Shown here: one piece after another, positions 10,338 to 28,702 of the stretch | Numbering within the stretch: position 1 is the first letter of the stretch | How the letters are laid out: the number at the start of each line of letters is the position of its first letter | Made by a program: the position numbers and the translations under genes | Origin: Pseudomonas aeruginosa PAO1 | Lineage (GTDB): Bacteria > Pseudomonadota > Gammaproteobacteria > Pseudomonadales > Pseudomonadaceae | DNA: 64,000 bases | NCBI RefSeq assembly: GCF_000006765.1 | Contig: NC_002516.2 | Direction: 5' to 3' (one strand) | The notes under the pieces: model-generated | Database searches by the model: none | Seen by the model: only the letters and a program-made list of their open reading frames with translations | Told to the model about the DNA's origin: nothing

Positions 10338-10829
10338 ATGACGTCTCATGCCTTTGCTCGCTGGAATCTTCTGCTTCTGGTCGCTTCCATCTTTGCCGGA
10401 CTTGTCTTTGCTCCGAGTGTCGATCTTTCCGCCTTGCCCACTCCTGAAGCCCGGAAGTGGGTTCTGGCGGAAGTTCCGTCCGTTGCGGTTGATACGACGG
10501 TTGCCGGCAAGTTGGCTGGAATGTCGTGGTGGGGGAGAACCGTGGACGAGGAGCGCGAAGCTGAATCGAAGCGGGTTTCGGTGGGCGTGGATGGAGTGGC
10601 GCTAATCAAGGTCGATTGGCTGCTACGCGGCATTGTCCGCGATGAAGGCGGCATCTTCGCCCTTGTTGCCAAAAGCGCCGAGGGACCTCTGCGGCGTTTT
10701 GCGGCGGGCGCCACTCTGCCTGGCGGCGAGCGTCTGGAGAGCATCACTGAACAAGGAATCCGCTTCTCGTTCTCGCAGGACGGGAACACCCAGGGTTTTG
10801 AAAGGAAACTGTATGCACCCTTGCCATAG
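10338..10829 (+). CDS. GspC/XcpP-like type II secretion protein (TM + HR domain, no PDZ)
   Basis: 163 aa; N-terminal hydrophobic anchor; C-terminal WLLRGIV...FALV...G...AGATLPGGERLESITEQGIRF resembles the T2SS-C/PilP HR fold; overlaps the secretin start. Confidence 0.7.
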   Translation: MTSHAFARWNLLLLVASIFAGLVFAPSVDLSALPTPEARKWVLAEVPSVAVDTTVAGKLAGMSWWGRTVDEEREAESKRVSVGVDGVALIKVDWLLRGIVRDEGGIFALVAKSAEGPLRRFAAGATLPGGERLESITEQGIRFSFSQDGNTQGFERKLYAPLP

Positions 10830-13092
10830 GCCGAGCTTTGCCTTCTTGCGCCACCCGTTGTCCATTGTCGTCTGTCTGGCCCTATTGGCAGGTTGCAGTA
10901 CTTCCCCATTGCAGTTTCCCGAACCATTGCTCGCGAAGTCGGAAAAAGCCAAGGCAACCGAGGGCGTAGCCCTGGTGAGCGACGACGGAAAGAAAGCCCC
11001 GGCATCGTTGGCTGTTCCGAAGACGGAGTTCAGTGGCACGCCCACATCGCCTCGGTCGATCGTAGGCGGTGTAGTCGATCGAATGGACAAGGCGATCCTC
11101 GACGACAAGAAGGCTGACATCAGTCTGAACGTGGAGGACGTACAGCTTGCCGCATTCATCAACGAGGTATTCGGCAACATCCTCGGTTTGCCGTTTGAGA
11201 TCGAAAGCGCTCTGAAGGAAAAGACTGATCGCGTGACCGTTCGTTTGGAACAGCCGCAGACTGCACAGATGGTCTACGAAGTCGCGCGCCAGGTGCTCGT
11301 CAACTACGGCGTGGAGATACTCCACCAAGGCGATATCTATCGCTTCCAGATCAAGCAGGTAGGGCTCAGCCCGGACGAGCCGCCCATTCTCATCAGTGGC
11401 GAAGCACGGCCTAGCGTGCCGATTGCCTATCGGCCGGTATTTCAATTCGTGGCGTTGCACAGCGTCGACCCCAAGGATGTGATTCCCTGGTTGAACAGTG
11501 CCTACGAAAAATCCGGCCTGAGCGTGATGGCCGATGGTGCGCGGAGTGGCTTGATGCTCAAGGGCATGTCTTCCATCGTCAACCAGGCCACCGAAGCCGT
11601 CCGCCTTCTCGATCAACCTTTCATGCGTGGACGTCACAGCCTGCGTATCGACCCGGCCTTCGTCAGTGCTGCCGACATGGCCAGTCAACTCAAGACCGTG
11701 ATTGCGGCGCAAGGCTACAGCGTCGGTATCGGCGAAGCGGTCGGCAGTATAATGCTGGTACCGCTGGAAAGTTCCAATGGCCTCATTGTCTTCGCCAACG
11801 ATGGCCAACTTCTCGACTTGGTGCGCGAGTGGGCGCAGCAGGTCGACAGGGCTCCGATGGCGGTTGCCGCAGGTATCGGCGAGGAGAAGGAAGGACTGTT
11901 CTTCTACGAAGCTCGCAATACCCGTGTCACCGAACTGGCCAAGTCGTTGCGGGCATTGGTATCGGGGTTCGCCGGGGAGGGTGCCTACGGGATCACCTCC
12001 GGACTGCAAAGCAGCGCTTCCAAGCGATCTGGCGGTGGCAGGCGCGCCGGAGACGATGGTGCGGCACCGGCGGTGGCTCCCTTGCTGCAAGCCGCAGGTG
12101 CCGCCGCGTTGGTGGGGGGCGACGGTGCTAACGGTTTGCTCGGTGGCTTGGCGGCCGGTATCAGCGGCAGCGGCACCATAGTGGAGGACGAGAATCGAAA
12201 CGCCATCTTGTTCCGAGGAGCGGCGCGTACCTGGCAGCAGATGCAGGGCTTGCTCCGGGAAATGGACAAGCCGGCCCGCCAGGTATTGATCGAGGTGACG
12301 GTGGCCAGCGTAAGTCTCAGCGACACCCAGGAGTTGGGCGTGGAGTGGGAGATGCTCAACGGCAGCTTCAATAGCGCGACCTCGACCGGAAGCAAGGGCA
12401 GCGCCGGGAAAGGAGGCTTCAACTACGTCATCAACACCGCCGGAGGCAATACCGCAGCCATCCAGGCAATGGCGGACAATCAACGAGTCCGGGTACTCGC
12501 CACTCCCCGTATCTTGGTCAAGAGCGGCGAGCAGGCCAACATCAATGTCGGTCGGGATATTCCTATCCCAACGGCCCAGGTCAATGACGACAGCACCACT
12601 GCTGGAAGCACCAACCTGCGCAATGAAATTGCCTACCGCTCTACCGGCACAATTCTGAATGTCGCCCCCGTAGTCTACTCGGATAGTCGGGTCGATCTTA
12701 CGGTCAGCCAGGAGTTGAGCGACAGTGGCGGTTCTTCCGGCGGCGGTGGCAAGGCCAGTGGTGGAGGAATCAGCGCTCCGGAGATTTCCAGGACGTCGCT
12801 GGAAACATCGCTTACGTTGAAAAGCGGTGGGTCGGTGCTGATGGGGGGGCTGATTCGGGACAACATAACGGACTCCAACGCTGGCGTGCCTCTCCTGAAG
12901 GACATTCCCGGGATCGGTTTCCTCTTCGGACGCCAGAAAGCCGTGAAGACCCGTGAAGAAGTCATCATGTTGATCCAGCCTTACGTGCTGGAAAGTGATG
13001 CCGATGCCAGGGAAGTGACGGAAAAGCTGCACGCCATGCTGAGCAAGACACTGGCCTGCTCCGATAGACCGGGCGCCTGCCGTATGGAATGA
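10813..13092 (+). CDS. xqhB: Type II secretion secretin (GspD family), lipoprotein type (PA1382-like; name xqhB recalled, not verified)
   Basis: 759 aa from ATG 10813 (AGGA RBS); lipobox LLAGC; N0-N3 domains; secretin core LDKPARQVLIEV-like, ATPRILVKSGEQA, GTILNVAP, LKSGGSVLMGGLI, VPLLKDIPGIGFLF. Confidence 0.93.
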   Translation: MHPCHRPSFAFLRHPLSIVVCLALLAGCSTSPLQFPEPLLAKSEKAKATEGVALVSDDGKKAPASLAVPKTEFSGTPTSPRSIVGGVVDRMDKAILDDKKADISLNVEDVQLAAFINEVFGNILGLPFEIESALKEKTDRVTVRLEQPQTAQMVYEVARQVLVNYGVEILHQGDIYRFQIKQVGLSPDEPPILISGEARPSVPIAYRPVFQFVALHSVDPKDVIPWLNSAYEKSGLSVMADGARSGLMLKGMSSIVNQATEAVRLLDQPFMRGRHSLRIDPAFVSAADMASQLKTVIAAQGYSVGIGEAVGSIMLVPLESSNGLIVFANDGQLLDLVREWAQQVDRAPMAVAAGIGEEKEGLFFYEARNTRVTELAKSLRALVSGFAGEGAYGITSGLQSSASKRSGGGRRAGDDGAAPAVAPLLQAAGAAALVGGDGANGLLGGLAAGISGSGTIVEDENRNAILFRGAARTWQQMQGLLREMDKPARQVLIEVTVASVSLSDTQELGVEWEMLNGSFNSATSTGSKGSAGKGGFNYVINTAGGNTAAIQAMADNQRVRVLATPRILVKSGEQANINVGRDIPIPTAQVNDDSTTAGSTNLRNEIAYRSTGTILNVAPVVYSDSRVDLTVSQELSDSGGSSGGGGKASGGGISAPEISRTSLETSLTLKSGGSVLMGGLIRDNITDSNAGVPLLKDIPGIGFLFGRQKAVKTREEVIMLIQPYVLESDADAREVTEKLHAMLSKTLACSDRPGACRME

Positions 13093-13377
13093 GGTCGGTC
13101 GCCTGCAACACTCATCTAGACGACTCTCGTCGTGCTTCCCGATAGGCCTGGAACTTTCCGGGCCGTATCCATCCATAAAAATCTATTGCGAATCTTCTTT
13201 CTAAATGCTCAGAAGTAGCCTTTTACTTCTGGGTGTGACCCGGTTTTTAGAAACGTTTGTTCGTGATCGCTTGGATATTCTTAAGAATTTTCTCTATTTT
13301 ACAGTTTTTATTTTTACCTTCTTCCGTAGGAAAATTCATTTATTAAATGGGAAGAGGTGAAAACGCACTTTTTGCTA

Positions 13378-13406
13378 TTGCTGAGGTGCTTTGGCAATTA
13401 TATAAA
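13378..13406 (+). promoter_or_regulatory. Sigma70-type promoter of the exported protein gene
   Basis: TTGCTG (13378-83), 17-bp spacer, TATAAA (13401-06), preceded by a very AT-rich tract; about 200 nt upstream of ATG 13611. Confidence 0.6.
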
Positions 13407-13610
13407 GCCATCCGTTGGTGCCTGTGTGGCCACTTCATGTAGTGGCTGGGCGTCAATTCGATCGGTGTCACCGGAATGATTGGAAGTATTCATGGTGTCA
13501 GGCCTGTCGATGTGTTGGTTGATTACCGATACATGATCATTAGCGTGTCGTCCAAAGATGGACACTTGACTGGAATGCTCAATATAAACGCTTCAAGGAG
13601 TTATTTTCTC

Positions 13611-15416
13611 ATGCTCAAAAGAACACTACTCAGCGCCGCTGTAGCTTCGGCACTGTTTGCTGGAGTCGCGAACGCTGCCGGAGTGGTTGCTATTGCCACA
13701 AGCCCCACTCTGGAGGCGAACTCGCCTGGTGCAACCGAGCAGTACGGACCAGGACAGGCCAACTATGTCGTCGGCAAGAGTGTGGAAAATGGTGCCAACC
13801 TCGACAGCAAGGCGGCCAACATCACCCTGGCTCAGGAGATTTTCGGCAACAAGTCCGAAGAAACTACCTTTGACCTACCCAGCGTTACCTACACCATCGA
13901 TCCAGTGAAGGCTGGAAATGCCGCTGCGGGCCACACCATCAAGCTGACCCTTGGTCGTACCGTCGTGCGCTTCGCCAAGGCCGTGACCGCCAACCAGATC
14001 AAGATCGGCGCCCTGGCGGCGGGTAGCGGCTTCGTCATCACCAGCGGCACTGGCGCCACTGACAACACGCTTGAGCTGCGCCTCGACCAGGCGGGTGCCG
14101 ACATGATCAAGCAGACCGCGACCGGCGGCAACGTGGTGTTCTTCAACTTCCGCGAGCCGAGCAGCCAGGACAGCCAGCCTGCCAAGGTCACCAACATGCG
14201 CGCTCCGCTTCAGGGCGATGCCACCTTCGTGGCTGGAAGCTGGAATCCGAAAGTGAGCCTGCAGAACGACCCGCTGAACGAATTGCGTTTCCAGGTCACG
14301 GTTTCCGCCCAGTTCGATACCACCACTGGCGCCGATGCCGGCAACCCTGCGAATAACGATTCTGCACCGCCCCTGACCATTTTCACTTCGCTGCCCGCGG
14401 TTTACTGGGACGTTCTCAACACCAACCAGTATGGGCAGAATCGCGTCCTGCATCCGTTGAACCTGAACAATCAGGATCGCTCCTTCGATACCACGGTGTC
14501 CGTCGGTGGCGATAACACCGATTATTATGGTGCCAACTATGCGCGTCTGGGCGCCGTACGGCTCGGCATCAATACGGATGTGCTCAACGAAGCGGGTCGA
14601 ACCGTGTTTGGTTTCGCCGGTGGCGACAAGGTGACCAGCACCCTGTCGGGTAACTTCAACGGGATCAGCGACATCGGCCTGACCACCGGGAACTGCTCCG
14701 CCTTTGCCGCCAATCCGGGGTCTGCCGCCAAGCTCTGGAATTCTGCCGCCATCGAAGGTGTAGTGGATGCGCAGGGCAACGGTACTTTGCCGGTATCGTT
14801 CGACAACTCGAATATCAACCAGACCTACAACGTCTGCGTGAAGGCTTCCGGCACCGTGCCGATGCAGGCGCTGCAACGTTTCGACGTGGGTGATCTGAAG
14901 GTCGACTTCGAGAACGTACGCTATGTCGACCGTACCATTGCAGGCAACCGTCTCGACGAGTTCTGGAAGAACAGTTGCGTCGCCAGTCTGTTCAATCTGC
15001 CTGGCTCCAATGTTTCCGACCAGTTCTTCATTCGTCTGACCAACACCAGCGACGATGGTCGGGACGGCAAGGTGCGCGGGGTACTGTTCGACCAGAACGG
15101 TAAGCGTTATCCGGCGACTGGCAGCACCTACCTGACCGACTCGAGCGGGAAGACCGCCCTGAAAGCGCACGAAACCGGTGTGTACACCGTAACCGAAGTA
15201 GCCAAGGCCTTCGGTATCGACGGCACCAACTGGAACGGTGCCAACGGTCGCGCACGTCTGGTCCTGGAAGGCGAGTTCCCAACCTGCGAGGCGCTCGGCC
15301 TGATCCGCTCTGCCAATGGCACCATCACCAACATGACCTCCACCACCCAAGGCAACTTCAACGAAGATGGCTCGTCCACCTCGGAGAACCACAAGGCTGG
15401 TAACAACCGCAACTAA
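13611..15416 (+). CDS. Sec-exported surface protein, candidate S-layer protein (PA1383-like)
   Basis: 601 aa from ATG 13611 (AAGGAG RBS); signal peptide MLKRTLLSAAVASALFAGVANA; rich in A/G/T/N/V/S; no enzyme motif recognised; sits directly behind a secretin. Confidence 0.85.
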   Translation: MLKRTLLSAAVASALFAGVANAAGVVAIATSPTLEANSPGATEQYGPGQANYVVGKSVENGANLDSKAANITLAQEIFGNKSEETTFDLPSVTYTIDPVKAGNAAAGHTIKLTLGRTVVRFAKAVTANQIKIGALAAGSGFVITSGTGATDNTLELRLDQAGADMIKQTATGGNVVFFNFREPSSQDSQPAKVTNMRAPLQGDATFVAGSWNPKVSLQNDPLNELRFQVTVSAQFDTTTGADAGNPANNDSAPPLTIFTSLPAVYWDVLNTNQYGQNRVLHPLNLNNQDRSFDTTVSVGGDNTDYYGANYARLGAVRLGINTDVLNEAGRTVFGFAGGDKVTSTLSGNFNGISDIGLTTGNCSAFAANPGSAAKLWNSAAIEGVVDAQGNGTLPVSFDNSNINQTYNVCVKASGTVPMQALQRFDVGDLKVDFENVRYVDRTIAGNRLDEFWKNSCVASLFNLPGSNVSDQFFIRLTNTSDDGRDGKVRGVLFDQNGKRYPATGSTYLTDSSGKTALKAHETGVYTVTEVAKAFGIDGTNWNGANGRARLVLEGEFPTCEALGLIRSANGTITNMTSTTQGNFNEDGSSTSENHKAGNNRN

Positions 15417-15439
15417 GTAAGTCGCTTTAGCTGCAGGCC

Positions 15440-15471
15440 AAAGGAGGCGATCTCCTCGATCGCCTCCTTTT
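15440..15471 (+). terminator. Rho-independent terminator
   Basis: Perfect 13-bp stem AAAGGAGGCGATC / GATCGCCTCCTTT, loop TCCTC, ending in TTTT; 23 nt after the stop. Confidence 0.88.
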
Positions 15472-15567: not shown

Positions 15568-16581
15568 ATGCGCGTATTGGTCACAGGAGGTGCAGGATTC
15601 ATTGGCTCTCATGTGTTGGTCGAACTCTTAGGCCAAGGCGCCAAGGTTGTGGTTCTGGATAATCTTGTCAACGGTTCTTCGGAATCTCTAAAGCGAGTGG
15701 AAAGAATAACCGGGCATCCGGTTGGCTTCGTACTGGGAGATGTTAGAGACAGTCTTCTTGTTGAGCGCCTGCTGATCGATGAGAAGGTTGATGCGGTCAT
15801 TCATCTGGCAGGGTTGAAAGCTGTTGGAGAAAGCGTTGATGACCCGCTGGAGTATTACGAGAGCAACGTTCAGGGAACTATTTCGCTGCTACGCGCCATG
15901 CAGAGGGTCGGGGTATTCAAGATTGTCTTCAGTTCTTCCGCAACGATCTATCAGATGCCTGGCACCTTGCCTATATCCGAGAGTTCGAAAGTGGGAGGCG
16001 TGGCCAGTCCCTATGGCCGGACAAAACTGACTGCCGAGCACATGCTCGATGACCTGGCTCGCTCCGATACGCGTTGGTCCATCGCGGTGCTCAGATACTT
16101 CAACCCCATCGGTGCTCATGAAAGCGGCCTCATTGGTGAGGACCCATGCGGTACCCCAAACAATCTTCTGCCCTATATCGCCCAGGTTGCAGTCGGACGT
16201 TTGAGTCGGTTGACGGTACATGGCGGCGACTATCCGACTATCGACGGGACGGGAGTCCGGGACTACATCCATGTTTGCGACCTGGCAGCAGGACATACCA
16301 GGGCGCTCGAATACCTGGGGCAGGGGCACGGCTACCACGTCTGGAATCTTGGGACGGGCACCGGCTATTCGGTCTTGCAGGTCATCGAAGCTTTCGAGCG
16401 AGTCTCTGGCAGGCGCATTCCCTTTACGGTGTCCGGTCGCCGCCCAGGCGATGTGGCTGAGTGCTGGGCGGATGTTTCCAAGGCGGAGCGAGAGTTGGGC
16501 TGGAAGGCGGGGCTGGGCCTCGAATGCATGATTGCGGATGCCTGGCGCTGGCAGGTTTCCAATCCGAGTGGGTATTCATGA
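15568..16581 (+). CDS. galE: UDP-glucose/GlcNAc 4-epimerase
   Basis: 337 aa; TGGAGFIG, HLAGLKAVGES, SSSATIY, YGRTK, LRYFNPIGAH, GTGVRDYIHV. Confidence 0.95.
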   Translation: MRVLVTGGAGFIGSHVLVELLGQGAKVVVLDNLVNGSSESLKRVERITGHPVGFVLGDVRDSLLVERLLIDEKVDAVIHLAGLKAVGESVDDPLEYYESNVQGTISLLRAMQRVGVFKIVFSSSATIYQMPGTLPISESSKVGGVASPYGRTKLTAEHMLDDLARSDTRWSIAVLRYFNPIGAHESGLIGEDPCGTPNNLLPYIAQVAVGRLSRLTVHGGDYPTIDGTGVRDYIHVCDLAAGHTRALEYLGQGHGYHVWNLGTGTGYSVLQVIEAFERVSGRRIPFTVSGRRPGDVAECWADVSKAERELGWKAGLGLECMIADAWRWQVSNPSGYS

Positions 16582-17729
16582 ATCACGCCGCTGTTGTCGA
16601 TGGGTTGCCTTTTAGCAACCTTGCGCTGATCTCCAATCAGGCTTTTTCAATCTACAATTTTCGTGGCGATTTCATTCGAGAGGTCGTACGTCGAGGAGCG
16701 AAGGTCTACGCTTTCGCTCCAGACTATGACGAGGTGACAAGCCGTCAAGTTTCGGAGCTTGGAGCAATTCCGGTTTCCTACAGCTTGAAACGTGCGGGCA
16801 TGAATCCCTTTCAGGAGTTGCACGCACTCCTGAGTCTGATCTGCAAGCTGCGGGCGCTGAAGATCGATGCCGTGTTCAGTTACTTTATAAAGCCCGTTAT
16901 CTACGGTGGTATCGCGGCTTTTTTGACGGGCGTCAGATTACGCTATTCGATGATCGAAGGCGCTGGTTTCATCTATTCGGAAGAAGGCTATACCCATTTT
17001 CTACGGAAGCTGCTTAGGCATGTCGTGACCTGTTCGATCAGGTTGGTCCTTCGGTTCTCGTCTCGTGTATTTCTTCTCAATCAGGATGACTATGACCTGT
17101 TTGTGAGCCCTCGGCTGGCCAAGACGGGACGTGCCTTGATATTGCCGGGTATAGGCGTCGATCTTGATTATTTTGCCGCGAGTTCTCCCGTGTTGCGGCC
17201 TATTACTTTCGTGTTTGTCGCTCGTCTTCTCAAGGAGAAAGGTATCTATGATTTTGTGGAAGCCGCGAGAATCGTTAGAAAACGTAGTCCGCTCGCGCGT
17301 TTTCTGGTCTTGGGAGGCGTCGACAGTAATCCAGGAAAGGTTTCACGGGAGGAAATGAACCAGTGGGTAGCCGAAGGCTTGTTGGAGTGGCCTGGCCATG
17401 TGCATGACATCAAGGCATGGGTGGCCAATACGAGTGTATTCGTGCTGCCCTCCTATTATAGAGAAGGTGTGCCGAGAAGTAGTCAGGAGGCCATGTCCCT
17501 GGGGAAGCCTGTGATAACGACTGACTGGACGGGATGTCGTGAAACGGTACTGGATGGTTTCAATGGATTTCTGGTACCGATCAAGAGTCCGCAGAGTTTA
17601 GCCGCGGCAATGTTGAAGTTCATCGAGTCGCCTTCGCTCATCGCACGTATGGGAGAAGCCAGTAGATCGCTGGCGGAACAGCGTTATGACGTTTTCAGGA
17701 TAAACAATACGATGCTTTCTGCGTTGTAG
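16578..17729 (+). CDS. GT4 glycosyltransferase (CapM/WbpU-like)
   Basis: 383 aa; ATGA overlap with galE; GIGVD, FVARLLKEKGI, EX7E motif REGVPRSSQEAM. Confidence 0.92.
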   Translation: MNHAAVVDGLPFSNLALISNQAFSIYNFRGDFIREVVRRGAKVYAFAPDYDEVTSRQVSELGAIPVSYSLKRAGMNPFQELHALLSLICKLRALKIDAVFSYFIKPVIYGGIAAFLTGVRLRYSMIEGAGFIYSEEGYTHFLRKLLRHVVTCSIRLVLRFSSRVFLLNQDDYDLFVSPRLAKTGRALILPGIGVDLDYFAASSPVLRPITFVFVARLLKEKGIYDFVEAARIVRKRSPLARFLVLGGVDSNPGKVSREEMNQWVAEGLLEWPGHVHDIKAWVANTSVFVLPSYYREGVPRSSQEAMSLGKPVITTDWTGCRETVLDGFNGFLVPIKSPQSLAAAMLKFIESPSLIARMGEASRSLAEQRYDVFRINNTMLSAL

Positions 17730-17748
17730 GGATCTGGCTGTGAGTTGT

Positions 17749-19017
17749 ATGAAGGGTAATGCGCCGGTACTTGCGGCCGTAGATATAAGCAAGGGTTTTA
17801 GAGTCTACAGGGCTCCTCATCAAAGGATGTTGCAGGCCATCTGGGGTGAGAGAAAGAAATTTTATTCGGAATTCTGGGCTCTGCGGAATGTGAGTTTCCA
17901 GGTTTTTCCTGGGGAGGTTGTTGGAGTAATCGGCTGCAACGGCTCCGGGAAGTCCACCTTGCTGCAGATACTTGCGGGTACCTTGCGCCCTACGAGTGGA
18001 CAGGTGGTTCGCCCAGAAAGGGTAGCGGCATTGTTGGAGCTGGGGGCCGGTTTCAACATGGAGTACACCGGCAGGGAAAACATAATCTTCAATGCCATGC
18101 TTCTTGGATTGGGCGAGCAGGAGATTTCTGAACGCCTCGACGAGATAATCCAGTTTGCCGATATCGGTGAGTTCATCGATCGTCCGGTTAGAACATATTC
18201 GAGCGGTATGTTCGTGCGTTTGGCTTTCTCCATTGCGGCATATGTCGATGCCGATGTGCTGATCGTGGACGAGGCCCTGGCGGTAGGTGACGCCGCGTTT
18301 CAGTTCAAATGCCTGAACCGGCTTGAAGAACTGCTGCTGAAAGGCATCACCATCCTGCTGGTCTCCCACGATATACAGTTGATCAAGAGTTATTGTAGTC
18401 GAGCGATCTATCTATCCAAAGGTAGAGTGATATTCGATGGCGACTGTGAAACAGCCACGGAACTCTATCTGCGGGACAGTATAGAGACACAGCGGGCGGA
18501 AGTCCGCTCAGGAAGCCTGATCGCTTCTGGCGAACACGGGAACTCGGTAATTGCATATGGAAATGGGCAGGGCAGGTTTCTATCCATCCGTATGGGTGTA
18601 CTTGACGAAGCCCGGGATTACTTCGATTCGGGCGAACGTGTCTGGGTCGAGGTACTTGTGCAATTTGACCTACCCGTCCCGGAGCACCCAAAAATCACCC
18701 TGACTATCCGTGACCAGCGCGGTTACAACCTCTATGGCATAAACAATTTATTGCTGGGCAAGGCTCTGAATGTCGAGCCTGACGGGCGCTTGAGAACACG
18801 TATCAGCTTCGACTGCGACTTGCAGGCTGGCGAATACGCCTTGACGTTTCGTCTGGAGAACTCTTTGTCGGAGTCCGTTTGCGAACTCATGGATAAAAAG
18901 GTCAATGCGGCGATATTCAGGGTCTTCAATTCGCCCAAGTGCTTCGATGCAGTGGTGAATCTGCATGGAGCATTCGAGCCGGTTCCGTTCTGCTGCGAGA
19001 CCCGGGCTACCCAATGA
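17749..19017 (+). CDS. wzt: Polysaccharide ABC exporter ATPase with C-terminal Wzt_C carbohydrate-binding domain
   Basis: 422 aa; FWALRNVSF, GCNGSGKST, YSSGMFVRLAF, LIVDEALAVGD, VSHD; about 170-aa C-terminal extension (F.SGE...V.V...ITLTIRDQRG...GEYALT). Confidence 0.92.
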   Translation: MKGNAPVLAAVDISKGFRVYRAPHQRMLQAIWGERKKFYSEFWALRNVSFQVFPGEVVGVIGCNGSGKSTLLQILAGTLRPTSGQVVRPERVAALLELGAGFNMEYTGRENIIFNAMLLGLGEQEISERLDEIIQFADIGEFIDRPVRTYSSGMFVRLAFSIAAYVDADVLIVDEALAVGDAAFQFKCLNRLEELLLKGITILLVSHDIQLIKSYCSRAIYLSKGRVIFDGDCETATELYLRDSIETQRAEVRSGSLIASGEHGNSVIAYGNGQGRFLSIRMGVLDEARDYFDSGERVWVEVLVQFDLPVPEHPKITLTIRDQRGYNLYGINNLLLGKALNVEPDGRLRTRISFDCDLQAGEYALTFRLENSLSESVCELMDKKVNAAIFRVFNSPKCFDAVVNLHGAFEPVPFCCETRATQ

Positions 19018-20720
19018 AGTCATCGTCTTTGACCATGGTATTCGTCGTCCACGCCGGCGAGCTGGAAATCAAGTCTGCCGTGTTGGCGGCTTCTCTACGC
19101 AAACGCTTTGGCTTTTCCATGGATATCATTGCCGCATGTCCATCGGGAAAGGCTGACTGGGGTGTGCCAAGCGATGCATCCCGGCGCTTATATGAGCGTT
19201 TGGGCATTCCTCTTTTGCCTATGGATAGTCCTTTCGGGCCAGAGTATCCAATAGGCAACAAGTTCGCGGCGTTGGCGCTGGGGCCGGCTGTTGGGCATAC
19301 GTTGTTTCTCGACAGTGACATGATCTGTGTCGATGCATTCGAAGCTGACATGCTTTGTCGTTTCGATGCGGCACTCAAACCTGCCGATATGGCATTGGTG
19401 GCAAAACAGAACGATTACTGGGAACGCATATACGCCCATGCGGGATCGGCATTGCCTGGAGATCGGGTAGTGACCACTTGTTCCGGGGAAGCGATGCCTG
19501 CGTACTATAACGCTGGCTTTATCCTGGTACGTGATGCCAGGCGTTTCGCCGAAGTCTGGTACAGGCTCGCCGAACGCGTCCATGCGGATCCGCTGATCAC
19601 CAACAAGATGCCCTGGCTGGACCAGCTGACGCTACCCGTCGCTCTGCACGCGTTGAACTACAAGACGAGAGCGCTCAGCGAACGGTTCAATTATCCGCTT
19701 CATATCAAGCCGCTATCCGCTGCGTCCCTACCACCCTTCTTCTGCCACTACCATTCTCTCGACACACTTGTCAGCGAGCGTTCGCTATGGGCCGAACTGG
19801 ACGAACTGGCCAAGCGTTTCCCTGAGCTGCGCGAAGTGCTTGCGCTGGATGCCAACTGGAAGAAGGCAATCCTGGCTCCTGCGCCTCGGCTGGCTTTCTC
19901 GGAAGGTGATTCCACCGGCACTGTCGAGGCCGGACAGGACCTGGTGATCACCGGGATTCCCCGGAGCGGAACCAGCCATCTATGCCGTCTGCTCTCCCAG
20001 CAGCCCGACACCGTGGTGCTCAATGAACCTCCTCAGGTATTCGAAGCGCTGAAGCTCTCGCCTCTTCCTTGGGGACTGCCACGCTACTACGCAGAGTTAC
20101 GTCGCGACATCCTGGCGGGCAGGCCCGTGCCGAACAAGCATGTGAATGGCCGCCTGGTCGACGACACTGCCAGGGGCAACGATCAGTCCAGCGACTATTT
20201 CGCTGAGGTGCGGGGGGCTTCGTTTCACCTGGGAACGAAGAACACGCTTGCCTATATCGCCCGGCTGCCCCTGATTCGCAAGGTCATGCCGACGGCGTTG
20301 CTGATCGCAACCATCCGTCATCCCTACGACACCCTGAACTCCTGGGCGAACACCTTCGAGCACCTGCGCCAGGCTGCCGTCGAACGCCAGCCGTTCGGAT
20401 GTCCCGATGACCTGGCCCTCACGGGATGGCAGCGCAAGGCACTACTGGCCATTGCCGATACCGACCACCTAGCTGTCCGGCGTGCTCTGTGGTGGCGTTA
20501 CCTGGCACTGCAACTGGAGGACGCCGGGGATTACGTCCAGTTGTTGCGCTACGAGGATTTCGTCGAGGCGCCGCAAACGACCTTGGCCGCTCTGCGAAAC
20601 AACCGCCCCTTGCCTTTCGACGAGCCTGCGGTGTGGAGCAAGGGGCTGGCGCCGGACGAGCAGGAGCTGGTTGCCAACATAGTCTGCGACGTTGCCGAGC
20701 GATTCCACTACGTCTTGTAG
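19014..20720 (+). CDS. GT8-like glycosyltransferase fused to a sulfotransferase domain
   Basis: 568 aa; ATGA overlap. N-half FLDSD, YYNAGF, WLDQ, RFNY, CHYH (GT8 pattern). C-half ITGIPRSGTS (5'-PSB loop), IRHPYDTLNS (3'-PB), LRYEDF. Confidence 0.75.
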   Translation: MKSSSLTMVFVVHAGELEIKSAVLAASLRKRFGFSMDIIAACPSGKADWGVPSDASRRLYERLGIPLLPMDSPFGPEYPIGNKFAALALGPAVGHTLFLDSDMICVDAFEADMLCRFDAALKPADMALVAKQNDYWERIYAHAGSALPGDRVVTTCSGEAMPAYYNAGFILVRDARRFAEVWYRLAERVHADPLITNKMPWLDQLTLPVALHALNYKTRALSERFNYPLHIKPLSAASLPPFFCHYHSLDTLVSERSLWAELDELAKRFPELREVLALDANWKKAILAPAPRLAFSEGDSTGTVEAGQDLVITGIPRSGTSHLCRLLSQQPDTVVLNEPPQVFEALKLSPLPWGLPRYYAELRRDILAGRPVPNKHVNGRLVDDTARGNDQSSDYFAEVRGASFHLGTKNTLAYIARLPLIRKVMPTALLIATIRHPYDTLNSWANTFEHLRQAAVERQPFGCPDDLALTGWQRKALLAIADTDHLAVRRALWWRYLALQLEDAGDYVQLLRYEDFVEAPQTTLAALRNNRPLPFDEPAVWSKGLAPDEQELVANIVCDVAERFHYVL

Positions 20721-20736
20721 AACCGGGAGAACCCTT

Positions 20737-21465
20737 ATGCTGGATATCAGTTTAATCATGAATTTCCATGCGGAAGACGTGCTGGCGCATTGGAGCCTGC
20801 TGGGTTTTCAACGCATGCGTGAATTTGCGTCGCACCATGGGGTTTCCGTGCAGTTGGTGGCGGTGCTCGACCGCGCCTCGCAAACGACTCGGCGAATCGT
20901 CAGGCAGCATCCGATCCTGCGCGAGGGCGACAAGGTCCTTCAGGTCGAGCATGGTGATCTCGGGCTTTCCCGGAACGCCGGGATCGATAGCGCGGATGCG
21001 TCCACGGTGGGGGTGTTGGATGGCGACGACTACTGCTCGGCGAACTGGTTGGTCGAAGCCCTGCAGGTGGTATCCGAGAAGGGCAATGGCGTCGTGGTCC
21101 ATCCCGAGTACACGGTGAGCCATGGAGCCTGCCATTTGCTGGGGCGTTCGGTAGATCAACTGAGCGAAGACTATCCCGTGGAAAGTTGCTTCAAGCATCA
21201 CCCATGGGTTTCCGTTGCCGTAGCCGAGAAAGCCGTATTCCAGGAGCTTCCATACCTGGAGACCCGAGTCGGGAAATCCGGCTTCGGTTATGAAGATTGG
21301 CATTGGAATCTCGAGGTGATTGCGTCCGGTCGGAAGCACACCCTGGCTAGCGGCACCTGCCTGTTCTATCGCCGCAAGGAAGCATCGATGCTGGCCGCCA
21401 TGGGCGCGCTGAACGCAGTGGTTCGCCCCGGACGATTCTTCGATGGACGGTGTTTCGATCACTAG
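20737..21465 (+). CDS. GT2 glycosyltransferase
   Basis: 242 aa; SLIMNFH, VLD, GLSRNAG, VLDGDD, GYEDW. Confidence 0.8.
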   Translation: MLDISLIMNFHAEDVLAHWSLLGFQRMREFASHHGVSVQLVAVLDRASQTTRRIVRQHPILREGDKVLQVEHGDLGLSRNAGIDSADASTVGVLDGDDYCSANWLVEALQVVSEKGNGVVVHPEYTVSHGACHLLGRSVDQLSEDYPVESCFKHHPWVSVAVAEKAVFQELPYLETRVGKSGFGYEDWHWNLEVIASGRKHTLASGTCLFYRRKEASMLAAMGALNAVVRPGRFFDGRCFDH

Positions 21466-21561
21466 CCGGCTTCTCTGGGGCCGGGGAGGCACATGCCTGC
21501 CGCGGCAGCCCCGCATCGATGAGCCGAGCATCCAGCACTTCTACCAAGTGGAACTTTCCTG

Positions 21562-23046
21562 ATGAGCCTGAACGGCAGACTGAAAGCTCGTGCGGCCAGC
21601 TTCGCTCGCACAGCCTATCCACCTATTCTTGGATCGTTGCGGCGGGTGCTCTCCGAGCGCCAACTACAACGCTTCATACTGGTCTGCGACCGTTTGAAGG
21701 GCTGGTTGCTCAAGGAGGCAGTCGTCGTACCGTCACCCTCTCCGATGGCGCTGCCGCCATGGATAGTCGACGAAATGAAGGCGTTGGCCCGGATCGAGCC
21801 TGCCCTGTATCCCTCGGCGGCGAAGCTGCGCGTTTTCACTTCCTGGAAGGCCCCGATAGATAACGGACCGGCGCAACTGTACCGGGGATGTCTGGCGGAC
21901 TTCATCGAATATGCGCCGGATATGGTCTTCCTCGTCCCGCATTTGCAGCGTGGTGGCGCTGACCTGGGAATCCTGCATCATGTGCGGTTATGCGCCGAGA
22001 TGGGCGTGAAGGTGACGGTAGTGGTCACGCGGGATGTGGTGTCTCCCTGGCTCAACCGGCTTCCGGCGGAGGTTCGGGTGGTGGAGTTCGGACGCCTGGG
22101 CAATCTGCTCGGCGAGGAGGACCGGCGCCTGGTACTGCTGCGCCTTTTGCTGCAATGTCCTGCCAGGAGTATCCACATCATCAACTCGCAACTGGCCTGG
22201 GAACTGCTCGAGCGGCATGGCAAGACGTTGACGTTCGAGGGTAAGCGGATTTACGCCAGCGTCTTTTGCGACGACCTGGACGGCAATGCGGTTCGCTGCG
22301 GCTATGCCAGCGAGTTCCTCCCACGGTCCTGGATGCACCTGGCGGGCCTGCTTTCGGATAACCGGACCTTCCTCCAACAGATTCACGAGCGGGACGGCAT
22401 TCCGCCGGAGCTCATGCATGGGCTCTACTTTCCCGCCAGCGACCATGCAGAGGCGATTCCGACCGCAGGCTCGACGATTCTTTGGGCCAGCCGTATCTCG
22501 CCGCAGAAAAGGCCGGACCTGCTCTACGAGATTGCCCTGGCGCTTCCCGAATACCTGTTCGAAGTCCACGGCGAGGTCGATCCTGCTTGCAGGGGAGAAA
22601 CCCAGAGGAAGCTGCGACGCCTGCCGAATGTCAGGCTTCATGGGCGTTACGACTCCTTCCAGGCCCTGGCTCGGCAGGGGCGATATGCGATGTTGCTGTA
22701 TACCTCTCGCTATGACGGCTTGCCGAACATCCTGCTCGAAGCCACTGCTGCAGGGCTGCCCATAGTCGCCCCCGACGTCGGGGGTATCGCTGAGTTCCTG
22801 AATACCGAAACGGGCTATCTGGTCGGCGCTGACGCCGATGCCGGCGAGTTCGCAAGGGCAATCAGGAGTGCGCTGGGCAATCCCGGGGAGACGGCGAGAC
22901 GGGTGAAACGCGCCCGCGAGTTGCTGACGCGACGTCATGGCTGGGCCGCATTCAGGGACGCGGCCAGGAACATACCCGGCTACCTGCCTGGGGGCGTGCG
23001 GCCGGAACAAGAGGTCTCCATGGAAACCGAACCGGTGTCCGGGTGA
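21562..23046 (+). CDS. GT4 glycosyltransferase
   Basis: 494 aa; GGAD, WASRISPQKRP, SRYDGLPNILLEA, PDVGGIAE. Confidence 0.88.
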   Translation: MSLNGRLKARAASFARTAYPPILGSLRRVLSERQLQRFILVCDRLKGWLLKEAVVVPSPSPMALPPWIVDEMKALARIEPALYPSAAKLRVFTSWKAPIDNGPAQLYRGCLADFIEYAPDMVFLVPHLQRGGADLGILHHVRLCAEMGVKVTVVVTRDVVSPWLNRLPAEVRVVEFGRLGNLLGEEDRRLVLLRLLLQCPARSIHIINSQLAWELLERHGKTLTFEGKRIYASVFCDDLDGNAVRCGYASEFLPRSWMHLAGLLSDNRTFLQQIHERDGIPPELMHGLYFPASDHAEAIPTAGSTILWASRISPQKRPDLLYEIALALPEYLFEVHGEVDPACRGETQRKLRRLPNVRLHGRYDSFQALARQGRYAMLLYTSRYDGLPNILLEATAAGLPIVAPDVGGIAEFLNTETGYLVGADADAGEFARAIRSALGNPGETARRVKRARELLTRRHGWAAFRDAARNIPGYLPGGVRPEQEVSMETEPVSG

Positions 23047-24266
23047 AGGGCGTGAGGTCGGCCCATTTTCTGCAGCGCCTGCTATTTTCCCTACCGCCTG
23101 CTTTTCGTTCGTGGCTGGGAGAGAAGGGAAGGCACCTGGTCCATCTTGTCCTCGATATCGGTTCGGCCTCGGCGCTCCGGCAGGATTCCGGGCACGCCAC
23201 TCAGTGGGATCCGCAGAAGCCCCTGCTGAGCGTGGTCATTCCCTGCTTCAACCATGGGAGGTATTTGAGGCGCGCGCTTGATAGCCTGGCTCGGCAGAGC
23301 TTCCAGGACTTCGAGATCATTCTGGTCGACGATGGTTCTGATGACCCTTCGACCCTGGGCCTCCTCGAGGCTCTCCAGGAGCCCGGCATGACGATCCTGC
23401 GCCAGCCCAATCGTGGGCCATCCGCCGCGCGGAATGCCGGTGTGGCGCGGGCGAGGGGGCGTTATATCTGCTGCCTGGATGCGGATGACTGGCTGGCGTC
23501 CACCTATTTGGAAAAGTGCCTGGTCTTGCTGGAGGGAAACTCTGGCGTCCGCCTGGCGTACAGCTGGGTCCAGCTGGTGGGAGAGGAGCATCGGCTGCAT
23601 CGTTCCGCCGGCTTTCATCCCGGACTGTTGCGTTACTTCAATCCGTTCTGTGTCTCCGCGATCTTTCATCGCGATGACTGGCTGGCGGTAGGCGGTTTCG
23701 ACGAAGCCAGGGAGGCACAGTTCGAGGATTGGGATTTCTGGATCGCCCTGGTCGGATGTGGGGTGCGAGGCAGGCTGATCAGGGAACCCCTGTTGTTCTA
23801 TCACCGCCAGGTCGGCTCCAGACTGGAGACCGGCAAACGTCATGCCTTGAGTTCTTACAAGCGCATGCGGACTCGCCATCCTCGCCTCTATCGAGGGAGT
23901 CCATTTCTTCGAGCGCAGCGGCAAGGCTATTACGACTGCTGGGCATATCCTCCTCTGCTCAACCTCTCCCGCGCCGACCAATACAACGCCGTCCTATCCG
24001 ATGCGGTAGCCGTGGTGGCCGACGCGCCGCTCACCGAGGACTGGAACGCATGGCGTCGACAATTCGATGAGCTGCCAGCGTCCTCGACGGTTTTCGTCAT
24101 TGCCGGTGGGTGCCGGAAGCTCCCGGGCTGGCTGCTGGAGAGGGCGAGCGCCATCTACTGGCTGGACGACCTGCTGCACGAGCGGCAATGGTCGGCTTTC
24201 ATCGATAACTTCAGGCGGACCCGCGGAATCTCCAAGGTGTTTTCCGTGGGCAGGACGGCGTGGTGA
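23043..24266 (+). CDS. GT2 glycosyltransferase with C-terminal extension
   Basis: 407 aa, GTG start overlapping the upstream TGA; SVVIPCFN, LVDDGSDD, ARNAG, CLDADD, VGGFDE, FEDWDFW. Confidence 0.9.
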   Translation: MKGVRSAHFLQRLLFSLPPAFRSWLGEKGRHLVHLVLDIGSASALRQDSGHATQWDPQKPLLSVVIPCFNHGRYLRRALDSLARQSFQDFEIILVDDGSDDPSTLGLLEALQEPGMTILRQPNRGPSAARNAGVARARGRYICCLDADDWLASTYLEKCLVLLEGNSGVRLAYSWVQLVGEEHRLHRSAGFHPGLLRYFNPFCVSAIFHRDDWLAVGGFDEAREAQFEDWDFWIALVGCGVRGRLIREPLLFYHRQVGSRLETGKRHALSSYKRMRTRHPRLYRGSPFLRAQRQGYYDCWAYPPLLNLSRADQYNAVLSDAVAVVADAPLTEDWNAWRRQFDELPASSTVFVIAGGCRKLPGWLLERASAIYWLDDLLHERQWSAFIDNFRRTRGISKVFSVGRTAW

Positions 24267-26035: not shown

Positions 26036-26056
26036 ATGAATAGGGAGGTTTCATCC

Positions 26057-27336: not shown

Positions 27337-27927
27337 TCAGGCTGGCTGGTTCGTCTCCAGGTAGGAAATGATTCGCTTCACCGCCAGGTCGGGGTCTTCT
27401 GAAAGTGTATCGATCGTTATGTTCGGCTGTGCGGGCGTTTCGTAGATCGAGTCGATCCCGGTGAAGTTTTCGATCTTGCCCGAGCGTGCTTTCCTGTACA
27501 GGCCTTTGGGATCTCTTCTCTCGCATTCCGAGAGCGGCGTATCGACAAAGACCTCGATGAAATGCTCGATGCCGATAAGTTCCCGAGAGAGGCGCCTGTC
27601 TCGCGAAAATGGCGAGATGGTTGCCACGATCACGATAAGGCCGGCTTCCAGCAGGATCTTTGCCACTTCCGCGATTCTTCGAATGTTCTCGGTGCGATCT
27701 TCGTCGCTGTAGCCAAGGTTTCGGCACAGGCCAAGGCGGAGATCGTCGCCGTCCAGGAGAAACGTATGTTTCTTCTGTTCGAAAAGCGCTAGTTCCAGGG
27801 CACTCGCAATAGTGGATTTTCCAGCGCCACTCAACCCGGTCAGCCAGATGACCGCTGGGCGTTGGCGCTTGAGCGCACTGCGTGTCTCGTTATCGATCGA
27901 TCGTTTTCCATGTTCACGAGGATTCAT
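27337..27927 (-). CDS. cysC: Adenylyl-sulfate (APS) kinase
   Basis: 196 aa; [47 protein letters not shown]. Confidence 0.96.
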
Positions 27928-28687: not shown

Positions 28688-28702
28688 ACACGGAGTCAAC
28701 CC

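What the first reader, a model, noticed from the sequence alone, without database searches (positions are those of the whole stretch)
13611..15416. 601-aa exported protein with S-layer hallmarks and a C-terminus resembling Aeromonas VapA
Seen: class I signal peptide, A/G/T/N/V/S-rich beta-type sequence, no catalytic motif, and codon choices (AAC, TTC, ATC, GGT/GGC) typical of highly expressed genes, unlike its island neighbours. By-eye comparison with VapA as I remember it: FFIRLTNTSDDGRDGKVRGVL versus IHIRDVSN...EGGKIFVTI, and NGRARLVLEGE versus GRQARLVFEVE. This similarity is weak, unquantified and recalled, so the S-layer call is inference.
Basis: partly seen in the sequence, partly recalled or inferred. 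Interest (0 to 1): 0.85.

Follow-up and report, generated by a model that had tools for sequence, protein, structure and literature searches.

The report
Cryptic S-layer-type protein of P. aeruginosa
The ORF is PA1383 of Pseudomonas aeruginosa, an uncharacterised exported protein that proves to be a distant relative of the Aeromonas VapA surface-layer protein, sitting in a cut-down, silenced copy of the same kind of secretion-plus-surface-sugar locus, so this well-studied pathogen may carry an overlooked surface-coat system.

Summary
Window 13611-15416 (+) encodes a 601-aa protein with a 22-residue Sec signal peptide, an A/G/T/N/V/S-rich all-beta sequence, no enzyme signature, and the strongest codon bias in its low-GC island. 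The window is P. aeruginosa PAO1, and the gene is PA1383, published only as "hypothetical".

PA1383 does not match the curated VapA model, and BLASTP against real VapA is not significant. Profile-profile comparison of its superfamily with the VapA family is significant (97.6 %, E 3e-12, 199 columns; scrambled controls E 0.3-0.9).

Gene context agrees. In P. citronellolis the order is wzm, a full type II secretion system (T2SS), liposecretin, PA1383 orthologue, then wzt and sulfotransferase, as published for A. salmonicida. P. aeruginosa keeps only the GspC-like gene and the secretin, and lacks wzm. Published work reports MvaT/MvaU repression and median-level expression in culture.

Best reading: a VapA/Slr4-superfamily surface-layer-type protein, anchored by its conserved C-terminal domain to an island-made, possibly sulfated glycan. 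In P. aeruginosa the system is truncated and cryptic. Lattice formation is untested. I class it as a new member of a known kind, with interest about 0.6.

The parts
10338..10829 (+). PA1381, a short GspC-like protein of 163 aa and partner of the secretin
   Evidence: Weak Pfam T2SSC match (E 0.012). It is 55 % identical to the P. citronellolis orthologue, which matches T2SSC at E 1.7e-4 and sits between gspM and the secretin.
10813..13092 (+). PA1382, a 759-aa secretin (GspD type) with a lipobox (LLAG|C), i.e. a liposecretin
   Evidence: Pfam Secretin 3e-43 and Secretin_N 1e-25. TIGR02517 GspD scores 255 bits, below its cut-off of 351. The lipobox is conserved in the secretins of all related loci. 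A transposon mutant is reported as more phage-sensitive.
13093..13610 (+). AT-rich 518-nt upstream region (43 % GC) with a Shine-Dalgarno sequence, AAGGAG, at 13596-13601. It is the likely promoter/operator region and the likely target of MvaT/MvaU silencing.
   Evidence: Sequence and composition. Repression by MvaT/MvaU and NrdR is reported in the literature. No sigma-70 consensus was found by the simple scan.
13611..15416 (+). PA1383, a 601-aa exported all-beta protein and candidate S-layer-type surface protein
   Evidence: AF2 model with mean pLDDT 82 and pTM 0.79, consisting of beta-sandwich domains.
13611..13676 (+). Sec signal peptide, residues 1-22, cleaved after A-N-A
   Evidence: Sequence; literature.
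14946..15344 (+). Conserved C-terminal domain, residues about 446-578. Motifs: C456..LFNLP..FIRLTNTS..GRARLVLEGEF.TCEALGL.R..NMTSTTQ. It is homologous to the VapA C-terminal region and is the inferred cell-surface or glycan anchoring and assembly module.
   Evidence: It is the most conserved part of the protein: 72-91 % identity against 36-83 % for the other domains. It is the hallmark of 205 database relatives. hhalign to the VapA family is significant. It occurs in tandem copies on secreted peptidases.
15443..15471 (+). Terminator-like hairpin (GGAGGCGATC-TCCTC-GATCGCCTCC followed by TTTT) directly after the PA1383 stop codon
   Evidence: RNA fold of 15410-15570, z = -2.65; sequence. The simple terminator scan missed it because the T-run has only 4 T.
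15568..16581 (+). PA1384 galE-type UDP-sugar 4-epimerase
   Evidence: Pfam Epimerase 4e-52.
16578..17729 (+). PA1385 GT4 glycosyltransferase
   Evidence: Pfam Glycos_transf_1 3e-29.
17740..19017 (+). PA1386 Wzt, the ABC-transporter ATPase with a C-terminal glycan-binding domain. No wzm partner lies in the island.
   Evidence: Pfam ABC_tran 2e-21 and Wzt_C 1e-19. The nucleotide-binding domain is 49 % identical to the Wzt next to vapA. wzm is absent from the window.
19014..20720 (+). PA1387, about 568 aa, with a sulfotransferase C-terminal half; its N-terminal half has no family match and only looks glycosyltransferase-like by eye (untested). It is the most constant neighbour of the family. The start codon is uncertain (the ORF opens at GTG 18939).
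   Evidence: Pfam Sulfotransfer_3 3e-15 over residues 310-535. Orthologues lie next to homologues in L001, L124-L128 and L130.
20734..27280 (+). PA1388-PA1392: GT2, GT4, GT2, GT4 glycosyltransferases and a sulfotransferase-like protein
   Evidence: Pfam. Synteny with P. citronellolis and L124.
27337..27927 (-). PA1393 cysC, APS kinase, which supplies PAPS for sulfation
   Evidence: Pfam APS_kinase 6e-64.

Best explanation
The ORF is PA1383 of P. aeruginosa. It is a Sec-exported, disulfide-containing protein of about 61 kDa built from beta-sandwich domains. It belongs to a large, unnamed superfamily of proteobacterial surface proteins whose hallmark is a conserved C-terminal domain of about 130 residues. 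This superfamily is remotely homologous to the VapA family of Aeromonas S-layer proteins and touches the Slr4 S-layer family.

In the ancestral form of the locus, still intact in P. citronellolis and others, the inferred sequence of events is:
1. The protein crosses the inner membrane by Sec.
2. It folds in the periplasm.
3. [quoted passage not shown]
4. It stays on the cell, bound through its conserved C-terminal domain to a polysaccharide made by the neighbouring Wzm/Wzt ABC-transporter pathway and modified by the linked sulfotransferases. There it forms an S-layer-type coat.

In P. aeruginosa the locus has moved and lost wzm and gspE-M. Only the GspC-like/secretin pair remains. Export would then need the Xcp or Hxc machinery, as is known for the orphan XphA/XqhA pair. 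Published work reports that the gene is repressed by MvaT/MvaU, so any coat is conditional.

Shown here: gene identity, export signal, fold class, homology, synteny and truncation. Inferred: surface retention, glycan anchoring, lattice formation, hybrid secretion and a phage-shielding role.
For: Identity:
- The protein is 100 % identical to a cluster of 625 P. aeruginosa sequences.
- The antisense ORF at 13875-15602 equals published olg2 at PAO1 1501875-1503602, which overlaps PA1383.

Fold:
- The AF2 model has pLDDT 82 and is all-beta. Foldseek gives only generic strings of Ig-like domains.

Superfamily:
- The profile search found 205 relatives at E <= 1e-3, typically 450-620 aa with a signal peptide and the C-terminal domain.
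- The two halves of the 79-sequence alignment match each other at E 3e-59 over 461 columns.

Homology to VapA:
- 97.6 %, E 3e-12, 199 columns, PA1383 residues 337-561 against VapA 261-475.
- The clade-restricted comparison gives 91 %, E 1e-6, and the controls are negative.
- One superfamily member passes the Pfam Slr4 threshold (27.5 bits against a cut-off of 25).

Context:
- L001 has the order secretin, homologue, DsbA, sulfotransferase, GspE-K.
- P. citronellolis has cmk, wzm, gspE-M, C, D, orthologue, galE, GT4, wzt, sulfotransferase.
- This is the same order as published for A. salmonicida: wzm, sps T2SS, vapA, wzt. I also found a sulfotransferase after that wzt.
- The C-terminal domain is the most conserved part of the protein and is reused in tandem on secreted peptidases.
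- The gene has its own AT-rich upstream region and a terminator hairpin.

Literature:
- PA1383 was detected in the trypsin-shaved surface fraction of MDR CF isolates.
- A PA1382 transposon mutant was more phage-sensitive.
- PA1383 is reported to be under purifying selection and translated.
Against: - PA1383 does not match the curated VapA model NF050048 or Pfam Slr4, and BLASTP against VapA is not significant.
- The homology covers only the C-terminal 130-230 residues and rests on profiles.
- PAO1 expression is about median with medium-to-low MS intensity. True S-layer proteins are usually the most abundant cell protein.
- From my own knowledge, no S-layer has been reported on P. aeruginosa.
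- P. aeruginosa lacks gspE-M and wzm, and a close relative lacks even the secretin. The gene can therefore persist without its dedicated exporter, which fits a different or reduced role.
- PA1383 has 4 Cys and VapA has none.
- No structure of any VapA relative is available for comparison.
- The Wzt glycan-binding domains and the sulfotransferases of the two loci are not detectably orthologous.
Confidence: 0.6

Rival explanations
1. PA1383 is a secreted or surface-attached adhesin or biofilm-matrix protein that does not form a crystalline lattice. It is a chain of Ig-like domains exported by T2SS that binds host or matrix glycans through the C-terminal module.
For: Foldseek's best matches are adhesin, pilin and integrin Ig-like domain strings. 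Slr4 itself is described as a major biofilm-matrix component. The C-terminal domain also decorates secreted peptidases. Expression in PAO1 is moderate.
Against: The characterised relatives reached here (VapA and, only through one weak Pfam hit, Slr4) are S-layer proteins. The locus order copies the A-layer locus. Foldseek TM-scores are only 0.1-0.2, which is generic.
Confidence: 0.2
2. In P. aeruginosa the gene is an evolutionary leftover. After loss of the dedicated T2SS core and wzm, the protein is made at a low level, stays in the periplasm or is degraded, and has no surface function.
For: gspE-M and wzm are absent from P. aeruginosa. Pseudomonas sp. BN415 has lost the whole T2SS. The gene is silenced by MvaT/MvaU.
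Against: All 13 island ORFs are intact in PAO1. Purifying selection on PA1383 has been reported. There are 625 sequence variants at >=90 % identity, mostly full length. The protein is found in the surface-shaved fraction of clinical isolates. A PA1382 mutant has a phage phenotype. From my own knowledge, an orphan GspC/D pair (XphA/XqhA) is known to work with Xcp.
Confidence: 0.13
3. PA1383 is an enzyme or carrier acting on the island's polysaccharide, such as a periplasmic glycan-binding, chain-length or export factor, rather than a structural coat protein.
For: It sits next to glycan genes, and the ~570-aa sulfotransferase-domain protein (PA1387 type) is its most constant neighbour.
Against: There is no catalytic family, motif or fold. 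The invariant residues are structural (G, N, R, C) in a beta-sandwich. A dedicated T2SS implies an extracellular destination.
Confidence: 0.04
4. The real gene is the antisense ORF olg2 (13875-15602, minus strand), and the 601-aa frame is a by-product.
For: A 575-aa antisense ORF exists and is reported as transcribed, translated and constrained.
Against: The plus-strand protein has hundreds of homologues across Proteobacteria, down to 20-30 % identity, with a conserved domain and conserved neighbours. olg2 is restricted to about one species. MS found 21 PA1383 peptides.
Confidence: 0.01

Closest known systems
VapA (A-layer protein) of Aeromonas salmonicida and the 'VapA family S-layer protein' of Aeromonas, Vibrio, Motilimonas and Oceanimonas (NCBIfam NF050048)
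   Same: Both have a Sec signal peptide, a size of 50-60 kDa, a similar A/T/G/V/N-rich composition, and a conserved C-terminal region that aligns profile-to-profile (E 3e-12). Both are exported by a dedicated T2SS. In relatives with intact loci the gene lies between wzm and wzt of an ABC-transporter glycan cluster, and a sulfotransferase follows wzt.
   Different: PA1383 does not match the family model, and the N-terminal two-thirds are unrelated at sequence level. PA1383 is 100 residues longer, has 4 Cys (VapA has 0), and carries a conserved G-N-N-R-N tail. In P. aeruginosa the T2SS core and wzm are missing, and the gene is reported to be repressed by MvaT/MvaU.
Slr4 S-layer protein of Pseudoalteromonas tunicata (Pfam PF19526)
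   Same: It is a secreted protein of Gammaproteobacteria with a dedicated T2SS operon beside the gene. One member of the PA1383 superfamily (P0174) passes the Slr4 Pfam threshold, and others come close.
   Different: PA1383 and its nearest clades give no Slr4 hit. The link is indirect and weak.
NpdA S-layer protein of Delftia, Paracidovorax and various Gammaproteobacteria
   Same: It is a signal-peptide protein of about 52 kDa with no known domains and a 12-gene gsp cluster upstream.
XphA/XqhA orphan GspC/GspD pair and the HxcQ liposecretin of P. aeruginosa (from my own knowledge: Michel et al. 2007; Viarre et al. 2009)
   Same: PA1381/PA1382 form a stand-alone GspC-like plus secretin pair without the rest of a T2SS. 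The secretin carries a lipobox, like HxcQ.
   Different: PA1381/82 derive from an S-layer-type T2SS and sit next to a candidate cargo. Cooperation with Xcp or Hxc is inferred and not shown.
RsaA S-layer of Caulobacter crescentus
   Same: It illustrates the same concept: a Gram-negative S-layer protein held on the cell by binding O-antigen, with its export genes next to the structural gene.
   Different: RsaA uses type I secretion and has a different fold (RTX type). There is no homology.

Membership tests
VapA family S-layer protein (NCBIfam NF050048, equivalog, cut-off 200 bits) | Full-length match to the family model at or above the cut-off | tested here: not met
   PA1383 matched no NCBIfam family at E <= 1. 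On the same model VapA scores 718 bits, a Vibrio member 584 and an Oceanimonas member 649.
VapA family S-layer protein | Significant pairwise similarity to VapA | tested here: not met
   BLASTP best E 0.41. The HSP covering the recalled motifs has E 1.6. The domain HMM scores 6.6 bits on VapA, P about 2.5e-4 for a single sequence.
VapA-like superfamily (remote homology) | Profile-profile homology of the conserved C-terminal region, above scrambled controls | tested here: met
   A2 against A3: 97.6 %, E 3e-12, 199 columns. The PA1383 and marine clades alone: 91.3 %, E 1e-6. Reversed or shuffled controls: E 0.3-0.9. A1 alone gives only 67.7 %, E 5e-5 over 32 columns.
T2SS-dependent S-layer locus (Aeromonas type) | Structural gene adjoining a dedicated T2SS cluster | tested here: inconclusive
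   The window holds only the GspC-like gene and the secretin. Orthologous loci in P. citronellolis, L124, L128 and L001 have the full gspE-M, C and D set. Pseudomonas sp. BN415 has none.
T2SS-dependent S-layer locus (Aeromonas type) | Insertion between wzm and wzt of an ABC-transporter O-polysaccharide cluster | tested here: inconclusive
   This is met in P. citronellolis, where wzm lies directly upstream of gspE and wzt lies downstream, as in A. salmonicida. In the window wzt is present and wzm is absent.
S-layer proteins (functional class) | Self-assembly into a two-dimensional paracrystalline lattice covering the cell | not testable with these tools
   This needs EM or cryo-ET, or in-vitro assembly. 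No multimer prediction was available.
S-layer proteins (functional class) | One of the most abundant cell proteins | tested here: not met
   This was assessed from the literature only. In PAO1 culture RNA-seq and Ribo-seq values are about median and MS intensity is medium to low, with repression by MvaT/MvaU. The relatives with intact loci were not tested.
Slr4 (Pfam PF19526) | Match to the Pfam model at or above 25 bits | tested here: not met
   PA1383 gives no hit, and neither do ten close relatives. Distant superfamily members score 27.5 bits (P0174) and 17.3 bits (P0115).
Type II secretion substrate | Cleavable Sec signal peptide, periplasmic folding and a cognate secretin | tested here: met
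   The signal peptide is present. There are conserved Cys residues (C409, C456 and C559 invariant), and a DsbA-like gene neighbours the homologue in L001. The secretin gene lies directly upstream. Actual secretion is not shown.
   No such Pfam or NCBIfam match was found. Foldseek gives no confident match, with TM <= 0.21. The island holds no usher or chaperone.

The most novel reading that the evidence does not exclude
P. aeruginosa and its relatives possess a conditional S-layer that is normally silenced by the H-NS-like proteins MvaT and MvaU. The coat protein PA1383 would be exported through the orphan PA1381/PA1382 GspC-liposecretin pair working with the Xcp or Hxc machinery. It would be anchored by a previously unrecognised C-terminal module to a sulfated ABC-transporter glycan and would shield the cell from phages. 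The same C-terminal module would serve as a general Gram-negative surface-anchoring domain, the counterpart of SLH or CWB2 domains, shared by S-layer proteins and secreted peptidases.
Probability: 0.2. Interest if true: 0.85.

Novelty: new member of a known kind. Interest (0 to 1): 0.6.

Why it matters
PA1383 and the PA1381-PA1393 island are conserved in a major human pathogen, yet no function has been published for them. Only seven papers in the searched library mention PA1383, and none gives it a function.

Linking the gene to the VapA/Slr4 type of S-layer system does three things:
- It gives a concrete, testable role to the orphan PA1381/PA1382 GspC-like/secretin pair.
- It suggests an explanation for the reported phage-sensitivity phenotype of a PA1382 mutant.
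- It points to a possibly sulfated surface glycan.

More broadly, the work defines a superfamily of about 200 clusters at 50 % identity. These are T2SS-linked surface proteins joined by one C-terminal domain, which may be a general anchoring module of Gram-negative surfaces. The loci also show step-by-step loss of a dedicated secretion system while its cargo gene is kept.

Tried and rejected
- Direct searches with PA1383 against Pfam, NCBIfam and PDB sequences found nothing.
- BLASTP of PA1383 against VapA was not significant.
- The profile of the close family alone (A1) against a single VapA sequence gave no usable signal.
- A word-indexed search with the 79-sequence alignment returned only the hits already known and cost one search.
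- Foldseek with both models gave only generic Ig-like strings at TM 0.1-0.2. The Sap and SbsB S-layer proteins appeared only at probability <= 0.1. I do not count this as structural support.
- No solved structure exists for the VapA family.
- I looked for orthology between the Pseudomonas and Aeromonas sulfotransferases and Wzt glycan-binding domains. Only the PAPS P-loop and the ABC nucleotide-binding domain align, so the synteny holds at the level of gene class, not orthology.
- The simple promoter scan found no sigma-70 consensus upstream of PA1383.
- The NpdA family could not be fetched and remains untested.
- I considered and rejected autotransporter, chaperone-usher fimbria, hydrolase, and 'the antisense olg2 is the real gene'.
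Full report
**What is there**

An AAGGAG Shine-Dalgarno sequence at 13596-13601 lies 9 nt upstream of it. The product is 601 aa.

Its N-terminus, MLKRTLLSAAVASALFAGVANA|AG, is a textbook Sec signal peptide. The mature protein is 61 kDa with pI 5.0, is rich in A, G, T, N, V and S, and has four cysteines. It matches nothing in Pfam, NCBIfam or the PDB sequence set.

The gene lies in a low-GC island from about 10.3 to 28 kb. Third-position GC there is 0.57-0.74, against 0.82-0.97 in the flanks. PA1383 is the most codon-biased gene of the island: Nc is 40.2 against 45.9-57.6 for the others.

A 518-nt spacer of 43 % GC precedes the gene. A perfect 10-bp hairpin followed by TTTT comes directly after the stop codon. 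The gene therefore looks like a unit of its own.

**Identity**

The protein is identical to the representative of a cluster of 625 sequences, all P. aeruginosa 'hypothetical protein'.

The 575-aa antisense ORF at 13875-15602 has the length, and the coordinates modulo 1,488,000, of the published overlapping gene olg2 of PAO1, whose 'mother gene' is PA1383. The window is therefore PAO1 at about 1.488-1.552 Mb.

The flanks fit this placement: fabF-like, pdxB-like and aceK genes, an AraC regulator, a sensor kinase, and a pyruvate-carboxylase-like gene.

The literature says the following about PA1383:
- It has an export signal, is repressed by NrdR and by MvaT/MvaU, is transcribed and translated at about median level, and was seen with 21 peptides at medium-to-low intensity.
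- It is under purifying selection.
- It was found in the trypsin-shaved surface fraction of MDR cystic-fibrosis isolates but not of sensitive ones.

A transposon mutant of the neighbouring secretin gene PA1382 was more sensitive to two phages. No paper in the library assigns PA1383 a function.

**The island**

The genes in order are:
- PA1381, a short GspC-like protein
- PA1382, a secretin
- PA1383
- galE
- a GT4 glycosyltransferase
- wzt, an ABC ATPase with the Wzt_C glycan-binding domain
- a 568-aa protein with a sulfotransferase C-terminal half
- four more glycosyltransferases
- a sulfotransferase-like protein
- cysC (APS kinase), on the opposite strand

The secretin starts with a lipobox (LLAG|C), as do its counterparts in every related locus.

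**Structure**

With the close family as alignment, the AF2 model was mediocre (pLDDT 69.5). With the 79-sequence superfamily alignment it reached pLDDT 82 and pTM 0.79.

The model has a low-confidence N-terminal segment (residues 33-67), then beta-sandwich domains, then a disordered tail (residues 579-601).

Foldseek against the PDB returns only generic Ig-like domain strings such as integrins, Gram-positive pilins, adhesins and PrgB. TM-scores are 0.1-0.2, and no enzyme, autotransporter or usher-type fold appears. This neither proves nor disproves an S-layer role. No VapA relative has a solved structure.

**Family**

A profile search of 1.84 billion representative proteins found 205 relatives at E <= 1e-3. 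Most are 450-620 aa, start with a signal peptide, and end with a 120-145-residue domain. Its motif is RNG..L.N.P...D..FIR.TNTS...G.V.GTL....GRARL....E..GL.R..G.L.NMS.

This domain is the best conserved part of PA1383: 72-91 % identity among Pseudomonas relatives, against 36-83 % for the other domains. It also occurs in three or four tandem copies on secreted subtilases, trypsin-like peptidases and C13 peptidases. It is therefore an autonomous module. I infer an anchoring or binding role by analogy with SLH or CWB2 modules.

The two halves of the superfamily alignment recognise each other over the full length (E 3e-59).

**Test of the VapA claim**

I obtained VapA without recalling any sequence. 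A published vapA primer was used as an exact pattern and hit A. salmonicida ATCC 33658. The locus (L020) carries a 502-aa ORF that scores 718 bits on NCBIfam 'VapA family S-layer protein'.

The comparisons gave these results:

| Comparison | Result |
|---|---|
| BLASTP, PA1383 vs VapA | not significant (E 0.41; E 1.6 for the motif region) |
| C-terminal domain HMM vs VapA | 6.6 bits |
| PA1383 vs the VapA NCBIfam model | no match |
| hhalign, superfamily (A2) vs 25 diverse VapA-family proteins (A3) | 97.6 %, E 3e-12, 199 columns; PA1383 337-561 on VapA 261-475 |
| hhalign, PA1383 clade plus its marine sister clade vs A3 | 91 %, E 1e-6 |
| hhalign, A2 vs reversed or column-shuffled A3 | E 0.3-0.9 |

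The significant alignment places FFIRLTNTS..GKVRGVL on [17 protein letters not shown], and GRARLVLEGE on GRQARFLFEVE.

The resemblance is thus real remote homology of the C-terminal region. PA1383 is not a member of the VapA family proper.

A weaker link exists to Slr4, the experimentally shown S-layer protein of Pseudoalteromonas tunicata. One distant superfamily member passes the Pfam threshold (27.5 bits), and others are sub-threshold. PA1383 and its nearest clades do not match.

**Context**

This is the strongest independent evidence.

- A marine relative 28 % identical to PA1383 lies between a secretin and DsbA, sulfotransferase and GspE-K genes.
- The 55 %, 63 % and 76 % identical relatives have gspE, F, G, H, I, J, K, L, M, the GspC-like gene and the liposecretin directly upstream. 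Downstream they have the same glycan genes as PAO1, gene for gene.
- In P. citronellolis the gene before gspE is wzm, preceded by cmk. From my own knowledge, this is the position where P. aeruginosa keeps its O-antigen cluster.
- The order wzm, T2SS, surface-protein gene, wzt is what was published for the A. salmonicida A-layer. In that locus I also find a sulfotransferase right after wzt.
- A ~570-aa protein with a sulfotransferase domain is the most constant neighbour of the family.

**P. aeruginosa is a truncated case**

PAO1 and a second strain have AraC, then the GspC-like gene, then the secretin. A tblastn search of the window with the P. citronellolis proteins finds no wzm and no gspE-M. 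Pseudomonas sp. BN415 (80 % identical protein) has lost the whole T2SS.

**Mechanism**

Steps that are shown:
- Sec export signal
- Conserved cysteines
- An adjacent secretin
- Homology to S-layer proteins
- Linkage to an ABC-transporter glycan pathway with sulfotransferases and cysC

Steps that are inferred:
- The protein is secreted by T2SS.
- It remains on the cell, bound through the C-terminal domain to the island's glycan, which is possibly sulfated.
- It forms an S-layer-type coat.
- In P. aeruginosa the remaining PA1381/PA1382 pair would have to use the Xcp or Hxc platform. From my own knowledge, XphA/XqhA is a precedent.
- The coat appears only when MvaT/MvaU silencing is lifted.

The phage phenotype of the PA1382 mutant and the surface-shaving detection fit this picture but do not prove it.

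**Against**

- Expression in PAO1 is only about median.
- No S-layer has been reported on P. aeruginosa (my own knowledge).
- The exporter core and wzm are missing.
- The homology is limited to the C-terminal third.
- PA1383 contains cysteines and VapA does not.

The rivals are a non-lattice adhesin or matrix protein (0.2), a functionless relic in this species (0.13), a glycan-pathway factor (0.04), and the antisense gene being the real one (0.01).

**Novelty and verdict**

T2SS-exported S-layer proteins embedded in O-polysaccharide loci are a known kind (VapA, Slr4, NpdA). PA1383 and its Pseudomonas and marine relatives are a new, unnamed family within that kind. P. aeruginosa carries a cut-down, silenced version.

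I rate it a new member of a known kind. Interest is 0.6, and confidence in the stated explanation is 0.6. Homology to the S-layer superfamily is much firmer than lattice formation in P. aeruginosa.

Noticed in passing
window 13875-15602 (-): This 575-aa antisense ORF overlaps PA1383 by 1536 nt and galE by 34 nt. It is the published overlapping gene olg2. Its non-overlapping 5' part runs straight through the PA1383 terminator hairpin (15443-15471), which could attenuate its transcription.
   Followed up: partly
window 10000-28700; L125, L129, L124, L128, L127, L130: The dedicated T2SS has been lost stepwise across the lineage. L128, L124 and P. citronellolis keep wzm and gspE-M, C and D. P. aeruginosa keeps only the GspC-like gene and the secretin, at a different chromosomal site. 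Pseudomonas sp. BN415 has none. The cargo gene and the glycan genes stay intact in all of them.
   Followed up: yes
window 19014-20720; L001 12340-14049; L126 2859-4625; L020 3202-3960: A sulfotransferase lies next to nearly every member of the family that was examined. It is usually a ~570-aa protein with a sulfotransferase domain in its C-terminal half, and one also follows wzt in the A. salmonicida vapA locus. With cysC and Wzt_C in the island, sulfate might be the terminal cap read by Wzt, or a modification needed for anchoring. This link was not found in the papers I read.
   Followed up: partly
proteins P0067, P0074, P0077, P0078, P0092 (database hits): The C-terminal domain of PA1383 occurs in 3-4 tandem copies on secreted subtilases, a trypsin-like peptidase and a C13 peptidase. 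This suggests a general surface-anchoring module of Gram-negative bacteria that has no Pfam entry.
   Followed up: partly
window 10813-10900; L125, L124, L128, L001 secretin N-termini: All secretins of this T2SS type begin with a lipoprotein signal (L-x-[GAS]-C). They may therefore be self-piloting liposecretins like HxcQ.
   Followed up: partly
window 27928-29145: Two small ORFs (28403-28687 and 28703-29119) without a Pfam match lie between cysC and the hybrid sensor kinase, at the right edge of the low-GC island. The second has core-like third-position GC of 0.91. The exact island boundary was not examined.
   Followed up: no
window 5090-7816 (-): The mechanical ORF for aceK is 908 aa, but the Pfam domains start at residue 342 and another strain's gene call is 577 aa. 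This is a long spurious 5' extension typical of high-GC DNA, not a feature.
   Followed up: no
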